Shown here one piece after another: positions 47,665 to 62,868 of a DNA stretch of 64,000 bases (position 1 is its first letter; each line of letters opens with the position of its first letter). The notes below the pieces were generated by a model that was given only the letters and a program-made list of their open reading frames with translations, did no database searches and had not been told where the DNA came from. A program made the position numbers and the translations under genes. The stretch lies in IMG/VR virus record IMGVR_UViG_3300042455_001086, positions 1 to 64,000 of that record; one strand, given 5' to 3'.

Positions 47665-47680
47665 AATTTTAATTTTTTCG

Positions 47681-49905: not shown

Positions 49906-49911
49906 AAATTT

Positions 49912-50120
49912 CCCCCTCCTGAGATTACAGAGGAGTAGTTAATTCGGTTTTTTCTGTTTCAAAAACCTGCGGGGCATCCCCCATAAAAAAGTCAGTTCTT
50001 ACTTGGGGGTGGGAGAACTTTCCGACCTTATTCCCAATGAGTACTCCGTCACGTAGTAGTACCAGCTCCGTTAAGTTTTTATGAAGAAAACTTAAAAACT
50101 TCGGGCATCTCTTTCCCATT
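49912..50120 (-). ncRNA. ~200-nt structured RNA sharing its 3' motif with the large ncRNA
   Basis: 13-nt identity with 41917-41929; bounded by tRNA-Gly and tRNA-Ala. Confidence 0.5.
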
Positions 50121-50123
50121 TTG

Positions 50124-50194
50124 AGCGGGTAGAGAGAATCGAACTCTCGTCTTCAGATTGGAAGTCTGAAGTAATACCATTATACGATACCCGC
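50124..50194 (-). tRNA. tRNA-Gly(UCC)
   Basis: TCAGA-CTTCCAA-TCTGA. Confidence 0.93.
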
Positions 50195-50409
50195 AAGTTG
50201 TGACAACTTTGGGTTGGTTGTCACATTTACGTGAATGAGGGGATCAATCCTACTAACATCACGGGTATAAGTTCGTCACATCAAACTATTACCAAAAACA
50301 ACGTCAGTTTTTATCCGACAAAACTGATTAAACGACCTGATCTCTTGTTACCCCCCTTTTAAGTGCGTGAACTCCTTCTCAAGTTGAACTCTACTGTATA
50401 CACTCCCAG

Positions 50410-50483
50410 TACCGAAGACGGGACTCGAACCCATAACCTTGACGATATAAGCGTCCTGCTCTCACCAATTGAGCTACGTCGGC
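50410..50483 (-). tRNA. tRNA-Ile(UAU)
   Basis: GACG-CTTATAT-CGTC. Confidence 0.85.
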
Positions 50484-50488
50484 ATAGT

Positions 50489-51115
50489 TTATTTTTTTCT
50501 TCTGTAAACCTCACCTTTATAGTGTTTATCAACAAATCTTTTTACTTGTGAATGTGTTAAACCTAAAATATCAGATACTTTTTTTACCCACCCATACGTT
50601 GTCATATCAACACCTTTAATTAAATCTAACCTTTCACTAACAATATCTTCAGTCAATTTATTAAAACCACCGAATTTATCACCCATTTTTTTTGCATTAT
50701 TAATTCTAAATTCTAAAGGTACCGATTCCCAAGTTTTTTTTCTTTTTTCTTTGTTATCCCACGAGCCGGCAATACTTCCATATTTTAATCCGTGTAACCG
50801 TCTTTTTTCTTCTGTCCAATAATTTTTATTTACATGATCAAAAGAACCTAAACCACCCAAAGAAATGTTATATGTGTTTTTATTAGTTACAAAACTTTCA
50901 TTAACTATTTCACTTTCCATCTGAAACATTTGTGTTGGGTTGTCGAATATTGCTAAATATTTTTTATCAAAGTTATTAATCCCGTATTTTTTAATAGCAT
51001 CTTTTATGTTTTTTCCAGAACCCATATACCCATCGTTAATATTATCAGTTTTATGTACACCAACATAAATCTTACCATTAACTTTATTTCTTATTTCATA
51101 AACTATGTATTTCAT
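50489..51115 (-). CDS. GIY-YIG homing endonuclease (Seg-like)
   Basis: YIVYEIRNKVNGKIYVGVH...YMGSG...E...YNISLGG. Confidence 0.88.
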   Translation of the reverse strand: MKYIVYEIRNKVNGKIYVGVHKTDNINDGYMGSGKNIKDAIKKYGINNFDKKYLAIFDNPTQMFQMESEIVNESFVTNKNTYNISLGGLGSFDHVNKNYWTEEKRRLHGLKYGSIAGSWDNKEKRKKTWESVPLEFRINNAKKMGDKFGGFNKLTEDIVSERLDLIKGVDMTTYGWVKKVSDILGLTHSQVKRFVDKHYKGEVYRRKK

Positions 51116-51378
51116 TTTGAACCTCCGTTTATATATAAATATAACGATAGTTCAAAAAATGTCAGTCTTTCCTGACCGTCACCCCTAACCCACAGGTATG
51201 AACCCGTATTGTAGTAAAGCTTGGTTAGCTATAAAGTAAGGATGAACACGGGCCTAGCAAGCCATCTTTCAGGAAAGGCCCTTCCACCTATTCATCCTAT
51301 TATTAAAAGTTTCGTTAAAAAGGTTTAGAAAACATACTTTTTTACAAAACCAAGATATTTATATATACACTTTTTAAT

Positions 51379-52062
51379 ATGAAAACACTATTCACAGAAG
51401 AAGAATATAAAAATTCAAAATCAACATCTAAATTACCTTGTGAATGTTTACTATGTAAAAAATCATTTCTTGTTGAAAAAAAACTAATAACTTATGAATT
51501 AAAAAATAATCGTAATCGTCATATCTATTGTTCTACCGAATGTTATTATAATGCTCAAAAAGTATTACCAATAATTTTTAAATGTAAAAATTGTAATTGT
51601 GAGTTTGACAGAAAAGAATCCTCAAATAAAAAAGATTCTTCTGGTAACTATTTTTGTTCTCAATCGTGTTCGACCACATTTAATAATAAAAACAAAACAC
51701 ACGGAAATCGACGCTCTAAACTTGAAATTTGGTTGGAGGACCAATTAAAAGTTATTTATCCCAACCTTCCAATCGACTTTAATAAAAAAGAAGTTATCGG
51801 TTCTGAATTAGACATTTATTTCCCAACACTTAATTTTGCAGTAGAATTAAATGGTATTTTTCATTATGAACCTATCTATGGTATAGATAAGTTAAATAAA
51901 ATCCAAGAAAACGACCAATCTAAAACTAAACTTTGTCACGATTTAAAAATAGACCTCTGTATTATTGATGTTTCGGAACAAAAATATGTCAAACCCTCAA
52001 CATCAAAAAAATACCTTGATATTATCACCAATATTGTCAATGAACGTTTGTTAATCTCTTAG
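51379..52062 (+). CDS. Zn-finger PD-(D/E)XK endonuclease, antisense to the tRNA operon
   Basis: CxxC/FCS..C; RSKLE..ELDIY..AVELNGIFH. Confidence 0.75.
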   Translation: MKTLFTEEEYKNSKSTSKLPCECLLCKKSFLVEKKLITYELKNNRNRHIYCSTECYYNAQKVLPIIFKCKNCNCEFDRKESSNKKDSSGNYFCSQSCSTTFNNKNKTHGNRRSKLEIWLEDQLKVIYPNLPIDFNKKEVIGSELDIYFPTLNFAVELNGIFHYEPIYGIDKLNKIQENDQSKTKLCHDLKIDLCIIDVSEQKYVKPSTSKKYLDIITNIVNERLLIS

Positions 52063-52118
52063 CCGGCTTTACCCGTTTCCAACAATCACCTCGTGGCGGT
52101 GGATTAACTCCGATTGTT

Positions 52119-52190
52119 TAGCGTGTTGTGGACTCGAACCACCCCGTAGACGTTATGAGCGTCCCATGCAACCAATTACACCTTCACGCG
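52119..52190 (-). tRNA. tRNA-Met(CAU), initiator-like
   Basis: C1xU72 mismatch; GGACG-CTCATAA-CGTCT; lacks the three consecutive G-C pairs. Confidence 0.75.
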
Positions 52191-52195
52191 ATATG

Positions 52196-52302
52196 TAGTC
52201 AAAGAAGGATTCGAACCTATCACGAGATAAGTGTGAAATTCACCTTATCCCAAGGACTTTTGAGTATTGTGTCCCAGCGTCTACCAATTCCGCCACTTGA
52301 CT
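52196..52302 (-). ncRNA. Leu(CAA)-like tRNA with a 13-nt anticodon loop and extended V-arm
   Basis: GGGAC-ACAATACTCAAAA-GTCCT. Confidence 0.6.
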
Positions 52303-52525
52303 GTTTTTTGTAGTTTAGTAGTTAGATTAAACTCTCGTTTCACTATCTTAATCTAACAGGTTGATACACTTAACGAGTTTCCCGTTTCTTACAACCACAA
52401 TATTTCTAATTTCAATGAACTTCCTTCCTTTTTCTGGAGGTGGGGTTACCATCCCTAACTTCCCCACCTCCGTTGTTTGTTTTACAAAGATATGAAGAAT
52501 TTTTTAATCTACCAAATCTTTTTTG

Positions 52526-52817
52526 TACTTGGAGCGGGAATCGAACCCGCACGGGCAAATGCCCACAGGATTTTCTTACCACTATAGTTTTCACTACCAA
52601 CCAAATTGTTGTTTGTGGTCTGGACTATACCTTAACCTTATCTTTTTAGACTTAGGTTCTCCGTGTCTAGTCTCTACACCTTACTCATTTCTGAGTCTTG
52701 GCTCGGTATTCCCATTTTAAAAGGTTCACCGAATTTACGGAGTTCTACTCAGAGGGTTTCCACTCTGGCACTCAAATTATATAAGTCCGGCGTGTCTACC
52801 TATTCCACCACCCAAGC
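52526..52817 (-). tRNA. tRNA-Leu(UAA) interrupted by a group I intron
   Basis: Exon 1 ends GGACTT and exon 2 begins AAAATCC; long V-arm. Confidence 0.92.
52575..52782 (-). mobile_element. Group I intron (IC3-like, 208 nt) at U^AA
   Basis: AAATTCGGTGAA (P), AATACCGAGC (Q), GTAGAGACTAGAC (R), GTATAGTCC (S), terminal G. Confidence 0.92.
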
Positions 52818-52900
52818 ATTTTACCAATATGTCAAAGAACCTTTGTCTTTTGTTTTACAAATATAAAAACTTTTTTTCAATTACACAATACCCTTAAACG

Positions 52901-52929
52901 AAAAAACCCCTCTTTTTTGGAGAGGGGTT
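52901..52929 (-). terminator. Attenuator terminator A
   Basis: AACCCCTCT/AGAGGGGTT stem plus U-tract. Confidence 0.85.
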
Positions 52930-52955
52930 CATTTTAATTTTGTATGTATAAAATA

Positions 52956-53024
52956 TTACACCCTCTTCTTAAAAGTTGCCTCAGCTAAATCGCCCCCTAT
53001 CAATAATATGTGTAAATTTTTCAT
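52956..53024 (-). CDS. Leader peptide A (22 aa) of tRNA operon A
   Basis: MKNLHILLIGGDLAEATFKKRV; follows ATATTTAT and precedes a terminator. Confidence 0.75.
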   Translation of the reverse strand: MKNLHILLIGGDLAEATFKKRV

Positions 53025-53091
53025 TTGCGGTTTTATTTGTTTTGTTATAAATATATGATACTTTTTAAAAGTGTCAAGTTATTTAATTATT

Positions 53092-53598
53092 TTAATCTTC
53101 AATACTATCAAGTAATTCCACAACAGCATCTACTGATTTTTCTAACGCCTTTAAATTTCTTATTGTTACATCATCTTCTACCAAATCTTCTAAATCCCTA
53201 ACTTTATCATAAGCAGATTCCAAGTCATTTAATATTTCATTAAGATCTATATCGTAATCTTCAAAATCACTTTTATGAAGTTTAACATCTTTTTCTTTAT
53301 AAGATTTAACTAATTGTTTAATAGTGCTTAATGTTTTTTTCATTTTAATAAAATCATCCATCAACCCTTCAGCAACTTTATATTGACTATGTTCAAAAGA
53401 ATCGCCTTTTATCATTGTTTTTAATTTACCAAATGCGATCATCATTCTACCAATACCATTGAATAATCCCATAGTAATGTTGTTTGCGGTTTTTCTGACT
53501 TTCAAATCTTTTTTTACACTTTCATAACCACCTTCGTTGATTACTCTTTTAACAATTCTTGTTAAATCTGATTCTGTTAATCTTATTACTTTTTTCAT
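53092..53598 (-). CDS. LTESDL-leader protein
   Basis: MKKVIRLTESDLTRIVKRVINE. Confidence 0.7.
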   Translation of the reverse strand: MKKVIRLTESDLTRIVKRVINEGGYESVKKDLKVRKTANNITMGLFNGIGRMMIAFGKLKTMIKGDSFEHSQYKVAEGLMDDFIKMKKTLSTIKQLVKSYKEKDVKLHKSDFEDYDIDLNEILNDLESAYDKVRDLEDLVEDDVTIRNLKALEKSVDAVVELLDSIED

Positions 53599-53767
53599 AA
53601 TGTTATTTAATTATTTTATTATTAAGTTTCCCCAAATGTTAATCATTTTTTTAATTTCATCTTCAGTATAAATATCAAATACTGGTAAATTTTTCATTTC
53701 TTTTTATTTATAATAAATATTCAACTTTTCAATTATTAATGTATTTATTGGTTAAATACATAATATT

Positions 53768-54277
53768 GTGAAACGAACAATAAGACTAACCGAATCTGAA
53801 TTAATTAATGTAATTCAACGAGTAATTGAAGAATCAAAAGGTGGAAATTTGATGGAAGATGTCAGACTTTTATTTGTCACAATGAATCTTTTTATTCCTT
53901 TAATTGAAAAAGATGGAAAAAAATCATTAGATTACAATGGTGAGATTAAATTTTCTATACCAAAAACTAAAATGGAACAAGACCCTAAAAAAACTGGTTC
54001 GTGGTGGGACGGAAAAAAAGTTAAAAACCTAAGTATTGACATCGCTGGTGATGAGAAATATATGATATTAAAAGAACTTACAAACGACACTAATCAAATT
54101 TCTGGTGTTGGTCCTAGGGTTAGTGAAATTGTTAGACCAAACTCAAATGGTTCATCTGCTCTTTTTGGTTTAATAGGTAAACAAATTGATGGTACAAAAA
54201 ACAAACGTACACAAGTTAATTTTAATGATGGTCTAGTATATGGTGTCGTTAATTTTATAGCAAAACCAACCCAGTAA
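53768..54277 (+). CDS. LTESEL-leader protein
   Basis: MKRTIRLTESELINVIQRVIEE (GTG start). Confidence 0.7.
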   Translation: MKRTIRLTESELINVIQRVIEESKGGNLMEDVRLLFVTMNLFIPLIEKDGKKSLDYNGEIKFSIPKTKMEQDPKKTGSWWDGKKVKNLSIDIAGDEKYMILKELTNDTNQISGVGPRVSEIVRPNSNGSSALFGLIGKQIDGTKNKRTQVNFNDGLVYGVVNFIAKPTQ

Positions 54278-54700
54278 CTAGGATGGTTTTATTATTTCAA
54301 AATTTGTCATAACATTTATTTCCGTTAATGAAGAATAAAAAACATAACGTGTAACGGATTCGTTTTTAATATCGGTGTTTACAATCAACCCATAATCAAA
54401 TCCCTCCTCCAAGATTTCAATTTGAAATTGTGTTTGGTTTAATTTAATTATATTGATAGGTAAAACTGAAACAAGTTTGCCGTTTCTGTAAAATGAGGAT
54501 GTTTTTTCATCAAAATCAATAAGATATTGAGTGTTTACAACATCATTTGACACCAAAGAAGAATTCTCTAATAAAACTTTAAGATTTTTTGACTCAGAAT
54601 ATGAGTAAAAGGTGTTTGATTCCTGAATTTTTATTATCAATTTTTGTGAGAATGAAAATGTCGAAATAAGTAAACCAACTAAAAGAATTAAATTTTTCAT
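54278..54700 (-). CDS. Secreted hypothetical protein
   Basis: Signal peptide ending SFSQ; host-type promoter at 54730. Confidence 0.65.
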   Translation of the reverse strand: MKNLILLVGLLISTFSFSQKLIIKIQESNTFYSYSESKNLKVLLENSSLVSNDVVNTQYLIDFDEKTSSFYRNGKLVSVLPINIIKLNQTQFQIEILEEGFDYGLIVNTDIKNESVTRYVFYSSLTEINVMTNFEIIKPS

Positions 54701-54782
54701 AAATTTTGTTTTTATATTAGTTATATCAACAAAGATATGTACTTTATTTTAATCTGCCAAATTTTTTTCAAACTTTTTTTTG

Positions 54783-54856
54783 TACCCCCAGCAGGACTCG
54801 AACCTGCAAAAATATGAGCCTAAATCATACTCGTATGCCAATTCCGACATAGGGGC
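54783..54856 (-). tRNA. tRNA-Leu(UAG), short variable loop
   Basis: TATGA-TTTAGGC-TCATA. Confidence 0.85.
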
Positions 54857-54868
54857 GTTTTTTTTTTG

Positions 54869-54953
54869 AGTAAGTGGCCAGATTCGAACTGACGTAAGAC
54901 TTTCGTCTATCGGTTTTGCAGACCGACGGTTTCAACCGCTCACCCACACTTAC
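54869..54953 (-). tRNA. tRNA-Cys(GCA) with a long variable arm
   Basis: TCGGT-CTGCAAA-ACCGA; U73; AGAC-GAAA-GTCT V-arm. Confidence 0.8.
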
Positions 54954-54956
54954 ATA

Positions 54957-55412
54957 TTAACGGCAGTGGTGATCTGCCGCTCTTGTTGCAATTTGATTAT
55001 GGGGTTTTATATTTGTTTTATACCCCAATGACATTGCCCATCCTGTTGCCGGTTGAACCAACTTTGAACTAAAATGTTTATCATCACTATTATAATCCAA
55101 ATCTATTTCAACTTTAACACTAACTTTTTGTGTTAGCCATTCAGCAACTTCAATTGAATAATCGGCCTCATTCCATAATCGTGTCCATTTGTCTTTTACT
55201 TTTTTCACTTTTTGTTTGTGGTAAATATAGTGGACACCTCTATTACCATACCTATATGCTATTGCAGTTACATAAACAGTACTTCTTCTATGATTTTGAG
55301 AATCAGTTCCTATGTGAACCTCAGCCCAGGGACAATCTTTAAGAATGTCTATTGTATGTTTTACAATGTCTGACACAGGTTCACCAGTGACTTTTCTGAA
55401 TACTCTGTTCAT
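54957..55412 (-). CDS. RNase H-like YkuK (DUF458) family protein
   Basis: IGTDSQ..YVTAI..RL..E...S...IDLD.N...A..AAD. Confidence 0.8.
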   Translation of the reverse strand: MNRVFRKVTGEPVSDIVKHTIDILKDCPWAEVHIGTDSQNHRRSTVYVTAIAYRYGNRGVHYIYHKQKVKKVKDKWTRLWNEADYSIEVAEWLTQKVSVKVEIDLDYNSDDKHFSSKLVQPATGWAMSLGYKTNIKPHNQIATRAADHHCR

Positions 55413-55434
55413 TTTAGTTAATTTTAATTGTTTG

Positions 55435-55509
55435 TGGAACCCAACCGATTCGAACGGTTACCTTCTGATCTTCAGTCAGACGTGACACACCTGCTTACAC
55501 CAGGGTTCC
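55435..55509 (-). tRNA. tRNA-Phe(GAA)
   Basis: TCTGA-CTGAAGA-TCAGA. Confidence 0.88.
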
Positions 55510-55515
55510 TTTTAG

Positions 55516-55587
55516 CGCAAAACTTCCGAGTCGAACAGAAATTTGATGGTTTGGAATCATCCGTGTTAGCCATTACACTAGTCTTGC
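55516..55587 (-). tRNA. tRNA-Trp(CCA)
   Basis: GATGA-TTCCAAA-CCATC. Confidence 0.85.
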
Positions 55588-55625
55588 AGTAGTGCCCGAC
55601 CTAGCTCGGGACCGACATCGGATTG

Positions 55626-55699
55626 TACCCCCACCAAGATTCAAACTTGGATAAAACATCTTAGAAGGATGTTGCATTATTCAATTATGCTATGGAGGC
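55626..55699 (-). tRNA. tRNA-Arg(UCU)
   Basis: ACATC-CTTCTAA-GATGT. Confidence 0.88.
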
Positions 55700-55881
55700 A
55701 AATAAAAGATGATAAATGACTTTATCAGGAATCTGGGATTCGTATTTCTACGACGCTTCACACACCATTAGAGAGTTGGGTTATTACATCAATACAATTA
55801 AGATTGAATACCTATCCTTAGTGTGTACCCTTGCGACACGTCTCTCCACGTCTGTCATTCTACGCTTTGTATCATCTTTTG

Positions 55882-55954
55882 TATCCTCGGAGAGATTCGA
55901 ACTCCCATCTTATGGTCCGTAGCCATAGGTTCTTCTCCGTTGAACTACGAGGAT
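55882..55954 (-). tRNA. tRNA-Arg(ACG)
   Basis: TATGG-CTACGGA-CCATA. Confidence 0.9.
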
Positions 55955-55960
55955 ATGTTG

Positions 55961-56034
55961 TGTGTATGATGGGTCACGATCCCATGGCCTCCACTTTCAC
56001 AGAGTGGTACTCTACCAACTGAGCTACATACACC
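55961..56034 (-). tRNA. tRNA-His(GUG)
   Basis: CCACT-CTGTGAA-AGTGG; T-loop AUCGUGA. Confidence 0.87.
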
Positions 56035-56040
56035 ATGTTG

Positions 56041-56108
56041 TCCCGTATGTTGGACTTGAACCAACCTCAAGTCGGATATGAGCCAACTTTGATCCCTGAT
56101 CATACGGG
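56041..56108 (-). tRNA. tRNA(CAU) Met with a minimal D-arm
   Basis: AGTTGG-CTCATAT-CCGACT; D-arm GATC-AGG-GATC. Confidence 0.7.
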
Positions 56109-56114
56109 TTGTTG

Positions 56115-56198
56115 CGGAAGACATTGGAATCGAACCAAATACCCGAAGGTACATCTCGCTTAGCAGGCGGACCCTATCGCCATCAAGGTTTATCTTCC
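56115..56198 (-). tRNA. tRNA-Ser(GCU), 8/4 fold
   Basis: GGAAGATA/TGTCTTCC acceptor; 4-bp T-stem. Confidence 0.82.
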
Positions 56199-56202
56199 GT
56201 AG

Positions 56203-56279
56203 TCGGCACAGTAGGAATCGAACCTACATGGGACCTATTAACCTTTCAACCGCGTATCAGGCGGAGGGTATATGTACCG
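56203..56279 (-). tRNA. D-armless tRNA-Ile(GAU)-like RNA
   Basis: CGGTACA/TGTGCCG acceptor; CCGC-CTGATAC-GCGG only 8 nt after the acceptor; canonical T-arm. Confidence 0.65.
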
Positions 56280-56447
56280 TGGTACGTATTTAGGGGTATT
56301 TCTTAACCACCCCCCTCAGCTCGTCAGCATCTCGGTGGTCGATACTTTAGTCGTGACGAACCCATCTGTCACTTCTTACTAGATTCTTGTGGCTTACTTA
56401 CCTAGGTTTAATCCGTTACCACTACAGGGAGCCCAACATTGTATCTT

Positions 56448-56523
56448 TGGCGGACAAGGTAGGGTACGATCCTACACCTTTCATATTAACAGTATGACGC
56501 TCTCCCAATTGAGCTACTTGTCC
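56448..56523 (-). tRNA. tRNA-Asn(GUU), encoded CCA
   Basis: TCATA-CTGTTAA-TATGA. Confidence 0.9.
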
Positions 56524-56527
56524 AGTG

Positions 56528-56608
56528 TGGAAGTGGTAGGGTTCGAACCTACACGCCTTTCGGACTTGATTTACAGTCAAGCGAGCCAGCCAATTGCTCA
56601 ACACTTCC
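56528..56608 (-). tRNA. tRNA-Tyr(GUA)
   Basis: CTTGA-CTGTAAA-TCAAG. Confidence 0.9.
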
Positions 56609-56614
56609 TTATTG

Positions 56615-56688
56615 TACACCCTACAGGGATCGAACCTGTGACCTGTTGTATGTAAAACAACCGCTACTACCATCTGAGCTAAGAGTGT
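56615..56688 (-). tRNA. tRNA-Val(UAC)
   Basis: GTTGT-TTTACAT-ACAAC. Confidence 0.9.
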
Positions 56689-56842
56689 GTAAAGATAATA
56701 CTTTTTTTTAATTATTCAGACATTTTCTGAATTTTTTTAAGAATCCCTTCGTTGGTACTCGTCGTTTCTATAGTCGTCACTTTCCCCGTTTTTGTTTTTT
56801 AAGTGTACTTCCCTACTGGGACTTGAAGTCAACACTTGTTTG

Positions 56843-56916
56843 TGTCCCCGGTGAGACTCGAACTCACACTCTTTCCATTAAAAGTGGAAAGCTTTAACCA
56901 GTTAAGCTACGAGGAC
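56843..56916 (-). tRNA. tRNA-Lys(UUU)
   Basis: TTCCA-CTTTTAA-TGGAA. Confidence 0.92.
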
Positions 56917-56956
56917 TTCTGTTTGTCATACTTGTCACTTTCCATAACACTTATTT

Positions 56957-57733
56957 TTATTTGTTTATTATTTCATTTAATTGGTTAATTAAGTAATTAA
57001 CATCACCAAAAATTATTTTATATTTTTTTGATACAACTTCCATTTTTTCTTTATCTAACACCAAACAATGTGGGTTTTTAGGATCCAAAAATAAATCATA
57101 TTTAGGGAGATAAAAGTCTGGATAATATAATTTATTTTTACCATTACTATTCACCCACTTTAATGGTTTAGGTCTAACCCAATCTACATTTTTTTCATCA
57201 AGGTACATCGCAACCTCTAACTCCCAAGTAGATTCTAAAGTCACATTTTTGTATTTTATAGTTTTTCTACTACCATTTCTGTATTTTCTACTTGTTGACG
57301 CTTCAATTCTACAATGTTCGGAACAAGTAACTTTATTACTATAATTTCTTTGTGTGAATAATTTATTACAAATTTTACAGTTAGTGTATTTTATTTTACA
57401 AGTTCCAAATTTTATAGTTTTAGATAATGATAATAAAATTTTATCTCTTGTTTCTTGTGATAAAGTCCTACCTACCAATGTTTTTGATATTTTATCTTTT
57501 GTTTCTTCATTACGCCTCCCTCTTTTTATGTTATTATATGTTGCCGCACAAGAATTACCACAAAATTTGTTTCTTTTTTTGTAGAAATCTAAATCACAAT
57601 CACATTGTAAACATTTATTTGGGTTTTTATAATATTCATCTCTTATAAGTTTTTTATTATTCTTAATAACTTCTACCGCAATTTTTTGTGCTTTTAATGC
57701 GTTTTCATAATGTCCAACATATAGTTCTTTCAT
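56957..57733 (-). CDS. Zn-finger/NUMOD3 PD-(D/E)XK homing endonuclease in the tRNA cluster
   Basis: CxxC, ETKDKIS repeats, ESTWE..YYPDFYL..LDPK. Confidence 0.78.
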   Translation of the reverse strand: MKELYVGHYENALKAQKIAVEVIKNNKKLIRDEYYKNPNKCLQCDCDLDFYKKRNKFCGNSCAATYNNIKRGRRNEETKDKISKTLVGRTLSQETRDKILLSLSKTIKFGTCKIKYTNCKICNKLFTQRNYSNKVTCSEHCRIEASTSRKYRNGSRKTIKYKNVTLESTWELEVAMYLDEKNVDWVRPKPLKWVNSNGKNKLYYPDFYLPKYDLFLDPKNPHCLVLDKEKMEVVSKKYKIIFGDVNYLINQLNEIINK

Positions 57734-57801
57734 AATCTACTTTCTATATAAATATCTCAAAAGTCAAAAAAAGTTAGTCGAACCTATAAATTATTTATCG
57801 T

Positions 57802-57874
57802 TGCAAGTGCCGGATTCGAACCGTTCTTGAATGTCCCAAACATCCCGTGCTCACCTGTTTACACCACACTCGCA
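57802..57874 (-). tRNA. tRNA-Pro(UGG)
   Basis: GGATG-TTTGGGA-CATTC. Confidence 0.8.
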
Positions 57875-57943
57875 ATAAAAATCAATACCCTGACTCCTTT
57901 CGAGTTTTGGAGGACTCGTATCATTCATTCTGTATTGATTTAG

Positions 57944-58029
57944 AGGAAGCCTGAGGTGTCGATCCCCATACCGGTCAAGGTACCGCCCGTTTTCAAGACG
58001 GGGTTGCAGACCGCTGCAATTAGACTTCC
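57944..58029 (-). tRNA. tRNA-Ser(UGA), SelC-like 8/4 fold
   Basis: 8-bp acceptor; 6-bp D-stem with CGGT loop; CCCGT-CTTGAAA-ACGGG. Confidence 0.82.
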
Positions 58030-58038
58030 AATTTATTG

Positions 58039-58109
58039 TTGTTCCCCAAGGACTCGAACCTCGATTCCACGGACCAAAACCGCGTGTCCTGCCATTAGAC
58101 GAGGGAACA
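58039..58109 (-). tRNA. tRNA-Gln(UUG)
   Basis: CGCGG-TTTTGGT-CCGTG. Confidence 0.92.
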
Positions 58110-58119
58110 TTATGAAGCC

Positions 58120-58135
58120 AATATGTCAAAGAACT
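58120..58135 (-). promoter_or_regulatory. rrn-type boxA (AGTTCTTTGACATATT); also at 38508(+), 42766, 48138, 52037, 52412, 52832
   Basis: GTTC(T/A)TTGA occurs ahead of RNA genes. Confidence 0.75.
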
Positions 58136-58147
58136 TTTTCTTTTTTG

Positions 58148-58220
58148 AGGTTTCTATCGGGTTCGAACCGATGACTCCGGGTTACAAAGCCGGGATATTA
58201 CCAAACTATACTAAGAAACC
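58148..58220 (-). tRNA. tRNA-Thr(UGU)
   Basis: CCGGC-TTTGTAA-CCCGG. Confidence 0.88.
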
Positions 58221-58230
58221 AATATAAAAC

Positions 58231-58260
58231 AAAAAACCCAAGGTTTGTCGCCTTGGGTCT
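58231..58260 (-). terminator. Attenuator terminator B
   Basis: AGACCCAAGG/CCTTGGGTTT stem plus U-tract, directly before tRNA-Thr. Confidence 0.85.
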
Positions 58261-58291
58261 TATATTTCTTTATTATGTTTGTTAATCGTTA

Positions 58292-58399
58292 TTAACTCAT
58301 AAATGAAAATGCCCTCGACGGTTTAAGCGTGTTATAACAGAACGACCACTGATTGCGCGGTTGCTTGCTAATGACCATATGTCTAAGATTTGTTTTCAT
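58292..58399 (-). CDS. Leader peptide B (35 aa) of tRNA operon B
   Basis: MKTNLRHMVISKQPRNQWSFCYNTLKPSRAFSFMS; rich in rare G/C-ending codons. Confidence 0.78.
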   Translation of the reverse strand: MKTNLRHMVISKQPRNQWSFCYNTLKPSRAFSFMS

Positions 58400-58493
58400 T
58401 TTTGTTATAAATATATCGTTATTTCTAAAAGTTTTAATTTACTCTACAAAGATAGGTATTTTTTTCTAATAAACAAGTGTTTTTGGAAAAAAA

Positions 58494-58784
58494 TTAGTGC
58501 AATCTCAATATATGTTTAATTATTTTATTTATATCTTCTTCTGTTTGGTAACCTAATACGTCATTTGTTAGTTCCGTATCGTAACAAATTTCCCACTGAT
58601 CTTTTGTTCCTTTTAAAATTGCAACTTCCCAAGTATCATCATCTGCGTAAGACGAATATCTGTTACTATAAGGAATTTTACATCTAACAACAGAAAGTCC
58701 GTATCCACCAGGAAAGAAAATTAATCCGTGTAACCCATTACCAGATTTGTTTGGTATAAACTCTATATCATTAAATGTAATCAT
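58494..58784 (-). CDS. Hypothetical phage protein
   Basis: F..GYG.SVV...WEVAIL...DVLGY. Confidence 0.7.
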   Translation of the reverse strand: MITFNDIEFIPNKSGNGLHGLIFFPGGYGLSVVRCKIPYSNRYSSYADDDTWEVAILKGTKDQWEICYDTELTNDVLGYQTEEDINKIIKHILRLH

Positions 58785-58872
58785 AGAACAAATGTAAGTT
58801 TTTTTTTAAATAAAAAATCAATAATATTAAATTTTATTTTTTTAATTCAAACTAATATTATATATTTGTATA

Positions 58873-59292
58873 ATGAAGACAATAAAAGTATATAAAATTA
58901 AAATTGACAACCAAGAGTTGGCAAATGATATTATGGACGATTTTACTAATATTGTTATTGGTGACGATATTTTAAATGTGATTTTTAATTCAATTAGTGA
59001 AACTGAAGATTTTGTTTTTTGTTTTTTAACTGATGATAAACAAGAGATGATTTTTAATTTGTTTATTGATTATGGTGTTTTAAGATCACACTTTGATATA
59101 ACAAAAGATGTTTTATATCAAAAAGATACGGGCATTGTTGTTGAATGTCTAAGTGATATTAAATTGATTAAAAATTTTATTAGTGAGTTTTTGGATTCCG
59201 ATACGGTTTTGGATAAAATTATTGAACTTGGTATTGATTCGTTAAATGATATTGATTACCAAGTATTACAAAATGAGAATCCCCAAGTATAA
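58873..59292 (+). CDS. Hypothetical protein
   Basis: D.VLDKI.E.GIDSL motif; host-type promoter at 58861. Confidence 0.7.
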   Translation: MKTIKVYKIKIDNQELANDIMDDFTNIVIGDDILNVIFNSISETEDFVFCFLTDDKQEMIFNLFIDYGVLRSHFDITKDVLYQKDTGIVVECLSDIKLIKNFISEFLDSDTVLDKIIELGIDSLNDIDYQVLQNENPQV

Positions 59293-59306
59293 CCTGGGGA
59301 TTTTTT

Positions 59307-59729
59307 TTATTTATTTCTTTTTCTACTTTCTGACATTGTTCCAGGACTAAATGGTGATCCAGCACCTAATCTTCTTTTTGGGTCAGAATGACGAGGAACC
59401 CATTTAACATATTTGTCTTTGTTACCAACAATTTCCCATCTTCCTCTATAATTATCTTCTTCAGCTTGACGCATAAGGGATTCTTTTTTTCTATCCCAAT
59501 TATCATAAAACACATCTTCTTCTGGTATAGAGTCTAATTCAGATTTTAAATCATCACGCTTAGCATCTTTTTCTGATTCATCACCGTAACCAGTAAAACC
59601 TCTTTTAATTCCTTTTCCTAAATCACCAAAGAAACCTTCCTCTACTTCAACATCTTGTTGTTCTTTGATTATTCTCTCAACCAAATGAATTAGTTCTGAT
59701 TCGGTTAATCTAACTATTTTCTTTCCCAT
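59307..59729 (-). CDS. LTESEL-leader protein
   Basis: MGKKIVRLTESELIHLVERIIKE. Confidence 0.7.
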   Translation of the reverse strand: MGKKIVRLTESELIHLVERIIKEQQDVEVEEGFFGDLGKGIKRGFTGYGDESEKDAKRDDLKSELDSIPEEDVFYDNWDRKKESLMRQAEEDNYRGRWEIVGNKDKYVKWVPRHSDPKRRLGAGSPFSPGTMSESRKRNK

Positions 59730-59903
59730 ATTTTTATTTTTTATTTCTTATTTTAATAATAAATATATGGGAGACTAAAAAAAAACAAAAAAAGGAGATA
59801 AAAATCTCCTTTTAATTTTTTTGTTCTTCTAAGATTTTAAGATAGACTATATAATCTTCAGATGTTATAAACTCGTAATGTATCTGTTCAAAAATATCTT
59901 CCA

Positions 59904-60641
59904 TTATTCGTTGTATAACATTTTAATAATTTCAACATCGATAGGTGCGTATTCAGTTGTAGTAGTCCAACCTTGGTAAAACATACTATTTGGATAATCG
60001 TAAGAATCTTGTTTGAAACCTAAAGCTTGAGTAAATTCTTCACGAAGTAAGTGTTTTTGACCGTCAATATCTGTACATCTAAAAATATCAACAAACATAT
60101 TTGCATCATAAATAACAGAACCAGAATTTGTAGTAAATAAACCCCAATTGTCCTCAACATAATTAGCAGCATATGGTTCTACATTTACATAATCTTGAGC
60201 TGAACCGAAAACAACAACAAAATTAGCCTCACTTCTTGAATTAACAAATTTGATGTTAATCGGATCAATATAAGAATTTAATTCATTTACAATACTTTTA
60301 AATTCGTCCATAAGGTAATCACGCTTTTGACCCATAACATATACCTTAACATCACTATTCCACTTTGAGATTTGGTCACCTGAACCATACTCTGAACCTC
60401 TACAAATAGTATTAAAGTAGTTGATTGCTTCTTTTGAATGTTCAACAGGCTCACTAGGTTCAGTAGGTTGATTATCACTTTCAGTTTGAGTTTGTGTTTT
60501 ATTACCACTACCATATTGAGTTGATAATGTATCAACCAAATCTGAAATATTGTTTAAATCAGATAATGACTTATTTTTTGAGTTTTCATACATAAAAAAT
60601 GCTACACCCAAAACTACGACTAAAGAGAAAACTGTTTTCAT
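59904..60641 (-). CDS. Membrane-anchored DUF2927-like zincin-fold protein
   Basis: KW..D..V, LLREEFTQALG..D....SMF...D.EII.MLY. Confidence 0.7.
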   Translation of the reverse strand: MKTVFSLVVVLGVAFFMYENSKNKSLSDLNNISDLVDTLSTQYGSGNKTQTQTESDNQPTEPSEPVEHSKEAINYFNTICRGSEYGSGDQISKWNSDVKVYVMGQKRDYLMDEFKSIVNELNSYIDPINIKFVNSRSEANFVVVFGSAQDYVNVEPYAANYVEDNWGLFTTNSGSVIYDANMFVDIFRCTDIDGQKHLLREEFTQALGFKQDSYDYPNSMFYQGWTTTTEYAPIDVEIIKMLYNE

Positions 60642-60996
60642 ATTTTTTATTGTTTTAATTGATTACAATACAAAGATATATGTTTTATTTGGATTTACAA
60701 AACATTTTTTGAAAAAAATATTAAATTCTTTTAAGATTTGATATGGTCATCACTAATATGAACTCATTGTATAAATTCTTTATTACAGTTAATACAGTTT
60801 GATTTTTTTATTTTACCATAGTTATGTAGTTTAAAATCAATAGGTAAATTCTTCATTTTTTTTAAAGTTATACCTAATTTATTTGCAATTTTTTTTATAT
60901 ATGTATCACTTACAGAATAAATTCTTCCTATTTCTCGATAAGATTTACCATCAACAAAAATTAATCTTTCTAAATCTTCTTTATTATATTTTTTTG

Positions 60997-61069
60997 TATC
61001 CCTATCAGGGTTCGAACCTGAATAATTTCTTTAGAAGAGAAATATGTTATCCAGTTACATCATAGAGAC
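60997..61069 (-). tRNA. tRNA-Arg(UCU), second solitary copy
   Basis: TTTCT-CTTCTAA-AGAAA. Confidence 0.87.
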
Positions 61070-61074
61070 ATATA

Positions 61075-61251
61075 TTAAATCTTTTTAACTTCGTATTTAT
61101 GTCCAGAATCCGAGTTGAGTTGAAATGTATCTTTCATTTTTTCCGCTTCTTTTTCTGTATCAAATTCCCATATTTCACCTTGACTATCTAATAAAATAAC
61201 CGGGACTCTTTTTTTATTTTCAGTTTTTACATGTTTAACAATTACATACAT
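61075..61251 (-). CDS. 58-aa hypothetical protein
   Basis: MYVIVKHVK...SGHKYEVKKI. Confidence 0.6.
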   Translation of the reverse strand: MYVIVKHVKTENKKRVPVILLDSQGEIWEFDTEKEAEKMKDTFQLNSDSGHKYEVKKI

Positions 61252-61461
61252 AGCTTATCTTTTTTATTCAATTATGAGTAATTGATTTTGTTTTGTCAAA
61301 TTAAATATTAAATTTTTAATCTTTTTTCCCTTAACCAAATCTAATATAAAACAAAATAGGAACCGAAGTTCCTACTTTGCTAGATAATTAACACCTCCTT
61401 CTTTTGTTGGTTTATCCTTACCGGACAACTACATCCAGTAAGTGTTTTTGAGACATTATCC

Positions 61462-62868
61462 TTATCTCATTGTTTTTCTTTTTATTTCTTTCAAACTCAA
61501 TCTAATGTTTCTTGAAAGAGATTCCTCAAGTTGTGTTCCTGCTTGTTGTGATGCTTTATTTTCTTCGGCATTAGGGCTAAATCTATTTGTTGATGTATTT
61601 AATTCTCTTAACATTGTTTCATAATCTTTTCCACCAACACCAAGGAAACCTTTTAGATTTACTCTACCACATTTTCTAACCAATTTTTTTAATGTTGTTA
61701 AAGTATCAAAATATTCATTCTCACCACCTTTATAATTACTACTATAAGTTTGGTTCATTGAATCAGCACATTCAGCGTCATCATTAGATGCCATACAAGC
61801 ATGTAATACTGTTATTGCAGCTCTACACGAATCTTTATCAGCATATTGACTTTGGACATCTTTTATTGCTCTTTTAGCTTGTCTTCCAGATGCTGAGGTT
61901 TTTACAAATTCTTTATAATCTGAAACATTTATACCTTGTTTTCTAGCATCTTCTTTTTGTTTTGCATTCATCGGCCATATTTGTCTATCACCCTCAATCT
62001 CATTTGCATATTTTAATAAGACTTCATCACAATCACCACCTTGACAAAGTTTTTTAACTGAAGTTGGGTTTTTCGCCTCCTGTGTTCCCGGTAATGCAGC
62101 GTCTCTTGTATAACCCATTCTTTTTAACATACTCTCAACTTCATCTGGAATATCAAAACCTCTTTCTTCCCCACCTAAACTCACCCAAATAAAATATTTT
62201 CCTGGTTCTGTAAATTCTTGTTTTAAACCATCCAATGATGTTTTTTTAATATATTGTTTTTTATCATTTACACCCATACCAGTATTCAAATCAACAGGTT
62301 CATATAGTGTTCCGATTCCAGATTTTGGTCTAACTTTTGTATAACTAAAACCGGTTTCTTTAGCACCACTCGGACCAACAAGTTCATCAACTCTAATTGA
62401 TTGCTCAGCAGAAAGATTTTTAACATCAGACACAAAACTTTCACCTCTTTTTAATTCTGGACATACTAACTGATTTTCAGAATATGGTTTTTCTTTATTT
62501 CCAGTATCTTGTTTTACAAGTAAAAAAGCTCCTTTTGAATTTCTTTTGGCAAATACAAAAAATCTAAGATCATTTAACATAAATGATACATATTGGTCAC
62601 CGGCGTTGACATTATTAACACCAGAATTTCTTAATTTTTGAATATTCTCTGGTTTAATATTTCCGATTTTACTTATATTTTTAGCCCCTTTATTCGTTAA
62701 ACAACCAGCAGGTCCTGAAATCCAGGTTAGCCATTCTTCTGGTGTTTTAAAAGAAATAGCACTATCTTGTTCATTTAATATTTGTTCAGAAATAAGTGGT
62801 TTTACATCACCCATTTTTGTTTCAAGAAGTCCAAGCATTCTTTTAATTTCTAAATTAACATTTTTCAT
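61462..62868 (-). CDS. Putative internal virion protein
   Basis: LLETKMGDVKPLISEQILNEQ leader. Confidence 0.6.
   Translation of the reverse strand: MKNVNLEIKRMLGLLETKMGDVKPLISEQILNEQDSAISFKTPEEWLTWISGPAGCLTNKGAKNISKIGNIKPENIQKLRNSGVNNVNAGDQYVSFMLNDLRFFVFAKRNSKGAFLLVKQDTGNKEKPYSENQLVCPELKRGESFVSDVKNLSAEQSIRVDELVGPSGAKETGFSYTKVRPKSGIGTLYEPVDLNTGMGVNDKKQYIKKTSLDGLKQEFTEPGKYFIWVSLGGEERGFDIPDEVESMLKRMGYTRDAALPGTQEAKNPTSVKKLCQGGDCDEVLLKYANEIEGDRQIWPMNAKQKEDARKQGINVSDYKEFVKTSASGRQAKRAIKDVQSQYADKDSCRAAITVLHACMASNDDAECADSMNQTYSSNYKGGENEYFDTLTTLKKLVRKCGRVNLKGFLGVGGKDYETMLRELNTSTNRFSPNAEENKASQQAGTQLEESLSRNIRLSLKEIKRKTMR

What the first reader, a model, noticed from the sequence alone, without database searches (positions are those of the whole stretch)
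52901..58420. tRNA-pool-auditing attenuators: two leader peptides whose codons mirror the anticodons of their own downstream tRNA operons
Seen: both minus-strand tRNA operons begin with the same architecture: ATATATTTATAACAAAAA promoter motif, short ORF, intrinsic terminator, then tRNAs with boxA. Leader A (53024-52956) codons 4-16 are TTA CAC ATA TTA TTG ATA GGG GGC GAT TTA GCT GAG GCA. Twelve of these 13 fall in the boxes of operon A: Leu-UAA, Ile-UAU, Gly-UCC, Asp-GUC, Ala-UGC, Glu-UUC. Leader B (58399-58292) has codons for all 18 tRNAs of operon B (Thr, Gln, Ser-UGA, Pro, Lys, Val, Tyr, Asn, Ile-GAU, Ser-GCU, Met, His, Arg-ACG, Arg-UCU, Trp, Phe, Cys, Leu-UAG). It contains no Asp, Glu, Gly, TTR-Leu or ATA-Ile; its only off-set codon is one Ala. 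The match reaches isoacceptor level (TTR vs CTT Leu, ATA vs ATT Ile, AGR and CGC, AGY and TCR). Established: trp/his/ilv-type attenuation, and host anticodon nucleases (PrrC, PARIS AriB, retron PtuAB) that phage tRNAs counter. Inference: stalling on any depleted tRNA would allow read-through into the operon that replaces it. I know of no description of this design.
Basis: partly seen in the sequence, partly recalled or inferred. Interest (0 to 1): 0.97.

Follow-up and report, generated by a model that had tools for sequence, protein, structure and literature searches.

The report
Leader-peptide attenuators before phage tRNA arrays
An uncultured giant phage and about 40 relatives carry two short translated leaders, each followed by a transcription stop signal and a tRNA gene block; they are built like classical bacterial attenuators, so the phage may tune tRNA output to how fast ribosomes read the leader.

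Summary
Both minus-strand modules (shared promoter motif, short ORF, intrinsic terminator, boxA, tRNAs) lie at the stated coordinates and recur in about 40 related IMG/VR phage contigs, always leader B - 'B' tRNA array - leader A - 'A' tRNAs.

Leader A has classical attenuator anatomy. The 3' end of its ORF pairs with the terminator's 5' arm. This antiterminator covaries as well as the terminator itself and forces Met/Arg codon changes. Leader B has a helix that sequesters its start codon, a hairpin over its stop codon, and a weaker, partly covarying antiterminator.

The codon partition exceeds chance. Leader A has 12/21 'A-set' codons and leader B 1/34, and leader B covers 18/18 B classes. 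Substitutions in relatives keep the bias, including TTR versus CTN leucine.

Leader content does not co-vary with array content. 'Operon A' in this window is several transcription units. A separate promoter sits between terminator A and tRNA-Leu.

Verdict: ribosome-mediated attenuators gating phage tRNA transcription are well supported for A and moderately for B. The isoacceptor-level 'tRNA audit' is plausible but unproven. I found no precedent in the literature searched.

The parts
53050..53077 (-). Promoter of leader A: TTGACA, 16 nt, TATATT(TA). It contains the 17-mer shared with leader B (53056-53040).
   Evidence: The motif is conserved in all but one (L055) of the 27 leader A variants. 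It also fits the Bacteroidota TTG-N19-TAnnTTTG type except for the last base (my reading).
52956..53024 (-). Leader A ORF (MKNLHILLIGGDLAEATFKKRV, 22 codons plus TAA). Codons 4-16 form the block rich in TTR, ATA, Gly, Ala, Glu and Asp codons.
   Evidence: The frame is open in all 22 distinct ORF variants, indels are in frame, and the other frames carry stops.
53010..53015 (-). Region 1 of attenuator A (codons 4-5, TTACAC; extends further 3' in relatives). It pairs with the ORF end and stop codon (GTGTAA, 52961-52956).
   Evidence: MFE folds. Pairing potential is 91-93% but shows no covariation, so it is inconclusive.
52961..52968 (-). Region 2 of attenuator A: antiterminator strand GAAGAGGG inside codons 19-22, ending 3 nt before the stop codon.
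   Evidence: It pairs with 52926-52919. Across 27 variants 96.3% of cells are paired, 4 of 8 pairs change on both sides, and 0 of 500 shuffles match. Duplex energy is -11.6 kcal/mol.
52898..52930 (-). Intrinsic terminator A (stem 52930-52904 plus T-tract). Its 5' arm CCCTCTCC (52926-52919) is region 3.
   Evidence: Energy is -15.1 kcal/mol. 94.7% of cells are paired and 3 pairs change on both sides.
52858..52880 (-). Extra Bacteroidota-type promoter (TTG ... TATATTTG) between terminator A and boxA. It is present in the window and some relatives and absent in many.
   Evidence: Read. In L019, L011, L009 and others boxA abuts the T-tract directly.
52824..52840 (-). boxA-like element of module A.
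   Evidence: It is conserved after the terminator in relatives.
52525..52817 (-). tRNA-Leu(UAA) with a 208-nt intron, the first gene behind attenuator A.
   Evidence: The same position holds an intron-less Leu-UAA in L019, L011, L009, L020 and L064.
58447..58476 (-). Canonical upstream promoter of module B (TTG-N19-TATCTTTG).
   Evidence: Read. It is conserved in relatives.
58400..58437 (-). Second promoter-like element of module B (TTAAAA, 16 nt, TATATT) carrying the shared 17-mer. It ends directly at the ATG.
58292..58399 (-). Leader B ORF (MKTNLRHMVISKQPRNQWSFCYNTLKPSRAFSFMS, 35 codons plus TAA).
   Evidence: The frame is open in 22 distinct variants with in-frame indels.
58381..58401 (-). 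Region 1 of module B: the translation start region (AAATGAAAA) plus codons 4-6. It pairs with the ORF's 3' end.
   Evidence: The 9-bp core is paired in every variant and nearly invariant. The extension covaries (column pair 26-98: GC 9, AU 7).
58301..58320 (-). Region 2 of module B (GTCGAGGGCATTTTCATTT). TTTTCATTT shows no synonymous variation in 24 variants.
   Evidence: It pairs alternatively with region 1 or with the spacer plus the terminator's 5' arm.
58281..58296 (-). Small hairpin GTTAAT-AACG-ATTAAC that encloses the stop codon.
   Evidence: column pair 128-133: UA 17, AU 3.
58227..58261 (-). Intrinsic terminator B plus T-tract. tRNA-Thr starts a few nucleotides after the T-rich tail, with no room for a promoter between them.
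   Evidence: Energy is -15.1 kcal/mol. Covariation is strong, with column pairs 168-171/182-185 changed on both sides in 6-13 sequences.
58147..58220 (-). tRNA-Thr(UGU), the first gene behind leader B.
58118..58134 (-). boxA-like element of module B, between tRNA-Thr and tRNA-Gln.
54782..58109 (-). Rest of the B array: Gln, Ser-UGA, Pro, Lys, Val, Tyr, Asn, (Ile-GAU), Ser-GCU, Met, His, Arg-ACG, Arg-UCU, Trp, Phe, Cys, Leu-UAG. It is interrupted by an endonuclease-like ORF and an RNaseH-like ORF.
   Evidence: The same order holds in relatives.

Best explanation
Both elements are ribosome-mediated (leader-peptide) transcription attenuators. They decide how much transcription from a dedicated promoter reads through into phage tRNA genes.

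Shown for A. A conserved short ORF ends 3 nt after a purine-rich strand (region 2). That strand is complementary to the 5' arm of the intrinsic terminator (region 3). Region 2, region 3 and the terminator's 3' arm covary three ways. boxA follows the T-tract, and tRNA-Leu(UAA) follows boxA.

Inferred for A. A ribosome that reaches the stop codon covers region 2, so the terminator forms and transcription stops. A ribosome delayed anywhere in codons 2 to about 17 leaves region 2 free to hold the terminator's 5' arm, and RNA polymerase continues. It then picks up boxA-dependent antitermination and transcribes the tRNAs.

Shown for B. There is a conserved ORF. A helix pairs the start-codon region with the ORF's last codons. 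A hairpin encloses the stop codon. The terminator covaries and tRNA-Thr lies directly behind it. A weaker alternative pairing joins the ORF end to the spacer and the terminator's 5' arm.

Inferred for B. The logic is trp-like: no ribosome, or a ribosome at the ORF end, gives termination, and a ribosome delayed early gives read-through.

Codon content. Leader A is rich in UUR-Leu, AUA-Ile, Gly, Ala, Glu and Asp codons. Leader B has one to four codons of each of 18 other classes and almost none of the A set. This matches the family-wide split of tRNA genes between the two arrays. The most likely signal is therefore the decoding speed of those codons, which gives negative feedback on tRNA supply. 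This last step is inference from composition statistics only.
For: Conservation and synteny. Both modules occur in the same order in all related contigs found.

Open frames. All 22 + 22 distinct ORF variants are open, indels are in frame, the other frames have 1-3 or more stops, and P(open by chance) is 0.13 and 0.07.

Antiterminator A. 96.3% of cells are paired, 4 of 8 pairs have compensatory changes, slide controls reach 68% or less, and 0 of 500 shuffles match. This equals the terminator. Column 81 switches ATG(Met)/AGG(Arg) together with columns 122 and 137, so RNA pairing overrides the amino acid. In truncated-transcript folds the 5' arm pairs with region 2 in all 27 variants.

Ribosome-mask simulation. 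Pairing is lost only when the A-site is at codon 17-18 or later.

Module B. The TIR:ORF-end helix is paired in every variant, and TTTTCATTT has no synonymous change. Columns 26-98-170-183 covary in a chain. Cognate region 2:region 3 duplexes are more stable than non-cognate ones, permutation p = 0.0014. The mask simulation behaves like trp in most variants.

Codon statistics. Across the family, leader B has 6 of 88 derived codon states in the A set against 14.8 expected, and leader A has 22 of 49 against 14.0. Leucine states are 10 TTR: 1 CTN in A and 1 TTR: 7 CTN in B.

boxA directly after the terminators.
Against: - There are no expression data; everything is comparative and thermodynamic.
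- The 1:2 helix of A has no covariation.
- At equilibrium, untranslated A transcripts prefer the antiterminator, so the behaviour without translation is unclear.
- The B antiterminator is weak (-4 to -10 kcal/mol). In the L030, L074, L079 and L082 group it reduces to GGG:CCC.
- Codon-position bias of substitutions is weak: 12/15/16 for A and 36/39/52 for B.
- Neither leader has a tandem run of one regulatory codon, which classical attenuators use for sensitivity.
- The window has a promoter between terminator A and boxA. Canonical promoters at 52516, 48991, 48486 and 47120 mean most 'A-set' tRNAs here need not depend on leader A.
- Leader codons do not track the tRNA content of the arrays.
- One relative (L065) lacks terminator A altogether.
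Confidence: 0.55

Rival explanations
1. These are generic translation-coupled attenuators. They are real, but they report only whether ribosomes follow RNA polymerase at all (global translation capacity or stage of infection). On this view the codon partition is a by-product of RNA-structure and peptide constraints plus shared ancestry.
For: The structural evidence is the same as for the main explanation. Leader codons do not co-vary with array content. A-set codons (GAT, GGT, GGG, TTA) are tolerated at variable positions of leader B, and TCA, TCT, ACA, AGA and CTA are tolerated in the leader A block. There are only two modules, so the partition amounts to two evolutionary observations.
Against: The partition is extreme against small-ORF and proteome nulls. 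Substitutions keep the bias (6/88 against 14.8 expected). The highly diverged L080 and L027 leaders again have 0-1 A-set codons. The TTR/CTN leucine split is synonymous and is not explained by the peptide. In leader A the codon-rich block ends near the boundary where the mask simulation says a stall stops mattering.
Confidence: 0.27
2. These are small independent genes, not regulators. Each ORF encodes a functional micro-protein with its own promoter and a constitutive terminator. The tRNAs are made from other promoters or from leaky read-through.
For: The peptides are fairly conserved (MKNLHI..., QWSF, RAFSFMS). In the window a promoter follows terminator A. In many relatives leader A precedes a 96-101-aa protein gene rather than a tRNA.
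Against: Amino acids change to keep RNA pairing (Met/Arg at column 81). The most conserved peptide stretch of B is conserved at all three codon positions and pairs with the start region. tRNA-Thr sits a few nucleotides behind terminator B's T-rich tail with no promoter in between. Pfam has no match for either peptide. The alternative pairings overlap the terminator arms.
Confidence: 0.08
3. The leaders are nascent-peptide (arrest-peptide) sensors. The leader B peptide would stall the ribosome in response to a small molecule or a translation factor, as TnaC, SecM or Erm leaders do, rather than in response to tRNA supply.
For: Order-conserved residues in leader B (W18, the S-F motif, RAFSFMS next to the stop codon) and a hairpin around the stop codon.
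Against: The C-terminal conservation is at nucleotide level and is explained by the helix with the start region. No known arrest motif was recognised. Nothing was tested directly.
Confidence: 0.07

Closest known systems
Amino-acid operon attenuators of bacteria (trpL, hisL, leuL, thrL, ilvGMEDA/ilvBN leaders; predicted Bacteroidota trp leader)
   Same: A short leader ORF and an intrinsic terminator, with an antiterminator that uses the ORF-proximal strand and an upstream helix competing with it. The outcome is set by the ribosome's position. Leaders sensing several amino acids (ilv, thr) are a precedent for sensing several tRNAs at once.
   Different: The genes behind the terminator are tRNA genes, and in some relatives a small protein gene, not biosynthetic enzymes. 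There is no tandem run of one codon: leader B spreads 18 codon classes over 35 codons. The element is viral. No Rfam leader family matches.
pheST (pheM leader) attenuation of an aminoacyl-tRNA synthetase operon in E. coli
   Same: Leader-peptide attenuation applied to a component of the translation apparatus, giving feedback from decoding speed to decoding capacity.
   Different: It regulates a synthetase, senses one amino acid, and is cellular. Here the product is the tRNA itself.
T-box riboswitches
   Same: The decision between terminator and antiterminator depends on the state of a specific tRNA.
   Different: T-boxes bind uncharged tRNA directly and need no ORF. No T-box match was found here, and the conserved ORFs point to ribosome sensing.
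rrn-type boxA (NusB/NusE) processive antitermination
   Same: GTTCTTTGACA-type boxA elements, some preceded by a boxB-like hairpin, lie in front of structured RNA genes.
   Different: boxA is a downstream accessory here. The regulatory decision is made at the preceding leader terminator.
tRNA clusters of phages such as T4, T5 and mycobacteriophages
   Same: Large phage-borne tRNA arrays, often interrupted by homing endonucleases and introns.
   Different: I found no description of a leader-peptide attenuator in front of such arrays.

Membership tests
Ribosome-mediated leader-peptide transcription attenuator (trp type) | Short ORF in the leader whose reading frame is maintained | tested here: met
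   22 + 22 distinct variants are all open, indels are in frame, and the other frames are closed.
Ribosome-mediated leader-peptide transcription attenuator (trp type) | Intrinsic terminator between the leader ORF and the downstream genes | tested here: met
   Covariation is shown (A; B).
Ribosome-mediated leader-peptide transcription attenuator (trp type) | Antiterminator mutually exclusive with the terminator and reachable by the translating ribosome: leader A | tested here: met
   Columns 76-83 pair with 120-127. 96.3% of cells are paired, 4 pairs are compensatory, and 0 of 500 shuffles match. The strand ends 3 nt before the stop codon.
Ribosome-mediated leader-peptide transcription attenuator (trp type) | Antiterminator mutually exclusive with the terminator: leader B | tested here: inconclusive
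   83.8% of cells are paired, and column pair 98-170 is UA 10, CG 9. Cognate duplexes beat non-cognate ones, p = 0.0014. It is strong in L027 and L080 but only GGG:CCC in the L030 group.
Ribosome-mediated leader-peptide transcription attenuator (trp type) | Upstream helix (1:2) that competes with the antiterminator | tested here: inconclusive
   A: 91-93% of cells are paired with no covariation. B: the core is paired in every variant and nearly invariant, and the extension has some covariation.
Ribosome-mediated leader-peptide transcription attenuator (trp type) | Tandem run of regulatory codons for the sensed amino acid | tested here: not met
   There is no run. Leader A has 3-4 dispersed TTR and 2 ATA codons. 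Leader B has 1-4 codons of each of 18 classes.
Ribosome-mediated leader-peptide transcription attenuator (trp type) | Read-through depends on translation of the leader and on charged tRNA | not testable with these tools
   This needs reporters, Term-seq or Ribo-seq.
Curated Rfam leader families (Leu, His, Thr and Trp leaders, Bacteroid-trp, and others) and T-box | Match to the family covariance model | tested here: not met
   A permissive cmscan of 45000-62000 (E up to 5) lists no leader or T-box family.
boxA-dependent (rrn-type) antitermination | boxA consensus downstream of the promoter and upstream of structured RNA genes | tested here: met
   There are two exact copies in the window and the element is conserved in relatives. 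Binding of Nus factors is not testable here.

The most novel reading that the evidence does not exclude
The phage splits its tRNA repertoire into two blocks and puts each block under its own leader-peptide attenuator. Each leader's codons sample the isoacceptors of its own block (UUR against CUN leucine, AUA against AUY isoleucine). A shortage of any one of those tRNAs, from codon-usage mismatch with the host or from host tRNA-cleaving defences, would then raise transcription of the block that replaces it. This would be a homeostatic multi-tRNA sensor with tRNA genes as its output.
Probability: 0.3. Interest if true: 0.92.

Novelty: new variant of a known kind. Interest (0 to 1): 0.8.

Why it matters
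Attenuation by leader peptides is a textbook mechanism. As far as I could find, it has been described for amino-acid biosynthesis, synthetase and resistance genes, and not for tRNA genes or phage tRNA arrays.

If these elements work as their anatomy suggests, they close a direct feedback loop from decoding speed to tRNA production. They would also give a concrete, testable answer to how large phages regulate their tRNA sets. Finally, they offer compact natural parts (about 150 nt) that could report the supply of many tRNAs at once.

Tried and rejected
- **Cultured-phage relatives.** blastn and tblastn against GenBank phages found only scattered tRNA hits.
- **Bacterial genomes.** The leader A pattern gave nine chance matches inside unrelated genes.
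- **False positives.** Three IMG/VR pattern hits (L045, L049, L059; 'MKNLHRL*') were unrelated.
- **Pfam on both peptides and the flanking 96-aa and 168-aa proteins.** No families matched.
- **Antiterminator for leader B by eye and by plain alifold.** It was not recovered. It appeared only when the start region was masked.
- **Covariation for the 1:2 helix of leader A in two registers.** None was found.
- **Third-codon-position excess as proof of translation.** It is weak.
- **Co-variation of leader codons with array tRNA content.** The result is negative. The only hint is CGN codons against the Arg-ACG tRNA: all 4 leaders with a CGN codon have the tRNA, against 4 of the 10 without one (my hand-computed Fisher p is about 0.07).
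- **A third leader module.** The boxA at 42774-42758 has a promoter and a boxB-like hairpin but no ORF or terminator.

Full report
**1. What is in the window**

The window is the first 64 kb of IMG/VR contig IMGVR_UViG_3300042455_001086, which is 257 kb long. On the minus strand of 45-61 kb ARAGORN finds 24-25 tRNA genes, and Rfam adds class-II and weak candidates.

Module A:
- a promoter, TTGACA-16-TATATT, at 53077-53050;
- a 22-codon ORF at 53024-52956;
- a terminator at 52930-52904;
- in this window a further TTG...TATATTTG promoter at 52880-52858;
- boxA at 52840-52824;
- tRNA-Leu(UAA) with a 208-nt intron at 52817-52525.

Module B:
- a canonical Bacteroidota-type promoter at 58476-58447;
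- a second promoter-like element carrying the shared 17-mer at 58416-58400;
- a 35-codon ORF at 58399-58292;
- a terminator at 58261-58233;
- tRNA-Thr starting a few nucleotides after the T-rich tail (58220);
- boxA at 58134-58118;
- then the remaining tRNAs down to Leu-UAG at 54782.

The 17-mer and the boxA 17-mer each occur exactly twice in the window. Both terminators fold to -15.1 kcal/mol.

**2. Relatives**

GenBank phages hold no relative. IMG/VR does.
- The 96-aa protein upstream of leader B retrieved 24 loci at 62-100% identity.
- Pattern scans retrieved 47 stretches for leader A and 32 for leader B. Three of the leader A stretches are chance matches.
- This gives 27 distinct leader A regions and 24 distinct leader B regions, with 22 distinct ORFs each.

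The layout is the same throughout:
- leader B, then Thr, boxA, Gln, (Ser), Pro, Lys, Val, Tyr, Asn, Ile-GAU, ..., His, Arg, Arg, Trp, Phe, an RNaseH-like ORF, Cys and Leu-UAG;
- one or two ORFs;
- leader A, boxA and, in many contigs, Leu-UAA;
- a 96-101-aa ORF;
- a promoter and boxA, then Met/Ile-UAU/Gly/Ala/Glu/Asp.

The split of the tRNA repertoire into a 'B' block and an 'A' block is therefore a family character.

**3. Are the ORFs real?**

Three observations support maintained reading frames.
- The frame is open in every variant.
- The other two frames carry at least 1-3 stops in every variant.
- A shuffled sequence of the same composition stays open with probability 0.13 (A) and 0.07 (B).

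All indels inside the ORFs are multiples of three, whereas spacer indels are of 1-2 nt.

Substitutions are only weakly biased to third positions: 12/15/16 for A and 36/39/52 for B. So the frame is maintained, but much of the conservation is at the nucleotide level.

**4. Leader A is built like a classical attenuator**

Folding every variant gives the terminator plus a hairpin that joins codons 4-9 to the ORF end and stop codon. When the terminator's 3' arm is left out, which mimics the moment before it is transcribed, the 5' arm pairs with the last codons of the ORF in all 27 variants.

On alignment A2 this antiterminator (columns 76-83 with 120-127) scores as follows:
- 96.3% of cells form standard pairs;
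- four of eight pairs change on both sides;
- no shuffle out of 500 reaches its covariation score;
- sliding the partner strand drops pairing to 68% or less.

The terminator scores about the same (94.7%, three pairs).

Column 81 inside the ORF switches between T (ATG, Met) and G (AGG, Arg) together with column 122 of the 5' arm and column 137 of the 3' arm. The amino acid therefore yields to RNA pairing. L027 (GAAGATGG/CCATCTTC) and L031 (GGAGGG/CCCTCC) add further compensatory states.

The antiterminator strand ends 3 nt before the stop codon, so a terminating ribosome must cover it. Masking a ribosome footprint codon by codon shows that the 5' arm stays sequestered unless the A-site is at about codon 17-18 or later.

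The upstream helix (region 1 with region 2) keeps its pairing potential (91-93%) but shows no covariation. What happens without any translation is therefore open.

Two natural variants are informative. L065 lacks the terminator, and L055 lacks the promoter because an upstream gene runs into the leader.

**5. Leader B**

RNAalifold finds three structures:
- a 9-bp helix, paired in every variant and nearly invariant, between the start region (AAATGAAAA) and TTTTCATTT in codons 31-33;
- a small hairpin that encloses the stop codon, with some compensatory change;
- a strongly covarying terminator.

TTT TCA TTT shows no synonymous variation in 24 variants, although other Phe and Ser codons vary. 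This fits an RNA constraint.

No antiterminator appears in plain folds. With the start region masked, the ORF's last third folds onto the spacer and the terminator's 5' arm. That structure is 83.8% paired, against 58% or less when slid.

Column 98 pairs alternatively with column 26 (GC 9, AU 7) and with column 170 (UA 10, CG 9). Column 170 in turn pairs with column 183 in the terminator (GC 12, AU 11). This chain through regions 1, 2, 3 and 4 is the signature of alternative pairing, but it rests on few independent events.

Duplexes between a variant's own region 2 and region 3 are more stable than non-cognate ones (-6.9 against -5.9 kcal/mol, permutation p = 0.0014).

The pairing is strong in L027 and L080 (11 contiguous base pairs plus the arm) but reduces to GGG:CCC in the L030 group.

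The mask simulation gives trp-like behaviour in most variants:
- with no ribosome, the arm is free;
- with a ribosome on about codons 1-14, the arm is paired 60-80% of the time;
- with a ribosome at the ORF end, the arm is free again.

I rate B as a probable attenuator, less secure than A.

**6. The codon partition**

I define the A set as TTR, ATA, GGN, GCN, GAR and GAY.

| Sequence set | A-set codons |
|---|---|
| 43 long ORFs of the window | 32.3% |
| 275 small ATG ORFs (20-45 codons) | 21.1% |
| Leader A | 12 of 21 |
| Leader B | 1 of 34 |

Leader A is the only small ORF that high, and leader B is one of two that low.

Leader B also contains all 18 B-array codon classes. This has P = 2e-5 under proteome usage and P = 1e-3 even when only B-set codons are drawn. 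It is unique among the 95 small ORFs of similar length.

The bias is kept by evolution.
- Among derived codon states across the family, leader B has 6 of 88 in the A set against 14.8 expected from one-step neighbours. Leader A has 22 of 49 against 14.0.
- The very divergent L080 and L027 leaders have 0 and 1 A-set codons.
- Leucine states are 10 TTR: 1 CTN in leader A and 1 TTR: 7 CTN in leader B, although TTR makes up 70% of leucine codons in the phage's genes. The peptide cannot explain this synonymous-level signal.

In leader A the enrichment appears to come mainly from TTR and ATA (5-6 of about 16 codons). These are the codons of the tRNAs placed first behind it (my count).

**7. What speaks against the full 'audit' model**

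- Leader content does not follow array content. For example, the L094/L010 array has nine tRNAs in 2.2 kb, with no room for more. Its leader nevertheless keeps Asn, His, Trp, Val, Arg, Ser and Met codons. Several arrays lack Trp, Lys or Val while the codons stay. The only hint of co-variation is CGN codons with the Arg-ACG tRNA: all 4 leaders with a CGN codon have the tRNA, against 4 of the 10 without one (my hand-computed Fisher p is about 0.07).
- ARAGORN misses some tRNAs, and tRNAs elsewhere in the genomes were not surveyed, so the test is imperfect.
- GAT, GGT, GGG and TTA occur at variable positions of leader B, and non-A codons occur in the leader A block.
- In the window the repeated promoter TTTGGTAGATT...TATCTTTG occurs at 52516, 48991, 48486, 47120 and 54761. 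An opposite-strand ORF (51379-52062) also interrupts the region. 'Operon A' is therefore several transcription units, and only tRNA-Leu(UAA) is clearly behind attenuator A, where it also has its own promoter.
- In many relatives leader A is followed by boxA, a promoter and the 96-101-aa gene rather than by a tRNA.
- Single dispersed codons give weaker sensing than the tandem runs of classical leaders (established knowledge).

**8. Comparison and novelty**

No Rfam leader family or T-box matches the region. Pfam knows neither peptide. The leader A pattern found only chance matches in the representative bacterial genomes.

Full-text searches found no description of leader-peptide attenuation of tRNA genes or phage tRNA arrays. 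An empty search is not proof of absence.

The mechanism class is known. The regulated product (tRNAs), the viral setting, the pairing of two attenuators with two tRNA blocks, and the many-codon leader are new. I therefore classify the finding as a new variant of a known kind.

The host is probably a member of the Bacteroidota. This is an inference from the TTG/TAnnTTTG promoters, and no host was identified.

Noticed in passing
window 52050-52118 (-): Sub-threshold match to an HDV-like ribozyme family (29.4 bits, gathering score 44) directly after a CAU-anticodon tRNA candidate (52119-52190). It could be a tRNA 3'-processing ribozyme.
   Followed up: no
window 52310-52400 (-); also L005, L010, L019, L021 and others just downstream of a promoter and boxA: A conserved stretch of about 90 nt (TTGTGGTTGTAAGAAACGGGAAACTCGT...), apparently structured, precedes a tRNA-like gene in all relatives. 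No Rfam family matches it.
   Followed up: no
window 48647-48726 (-); L009 14490-14569: A tRNA-like gene that ARAGORN calls with a four-base anticodon (ACTT). It is conserved in at least one relative.
   Followed up: no
window 52525-52817 (-); L002 14777-15560: tRNA-Leu(UAA) is split after anticodon-loop position 36 by a 208-nt intron in the window. In L002 the intron is 699 nt and carries an ORF. Several relatives have no intron.
   Followed up: partly
window 54957-55412 (-): A 151-aa RNaseH-like protein (PF04308, E = 4e-24) is embedded between tRNA-Phe and tRNA-Cys in every relative's B array.
   Followed up: partly
window 46380-48960 (-): Several tRNA-like genes begin with AGTCAGGTGGCGGAAT... 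(about 48955, 47800, 47415, 47075, 46480). Some have large insertions, and ARAGORN gives them odd or no identities.
   Followed up: no
window 42758-42850 (-): Another promoter, boxB-like hairpin and boxA-like element (GTTCTTTGAAAAATTAG) without a leader ORF or terminator. It leads into a long G+C-richer stretch that looks structured.
   Followed up: no
window 47089-47120, 48455-48486, 48960-48991, 52485-52516, 54730-54761 (-): A near-identical 32-nt promoter (TTTGGTAGATTGAAATAAAATACATATCTTTG) is repeated five times within the tRNA region.
   Followed up: partly
window 50489-51115 (-), 56957-57733 (-), 48979-49890 (-), 51379-52062 (+): ORFs that look like homing endonucleases interrupt the tRNA arrays: one GIY-YIG protein and two Cys-rich ORFs with no Pfam call. 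A plus-strand ORF has a faint PvuRts1I-like match.
   Followed up: partly
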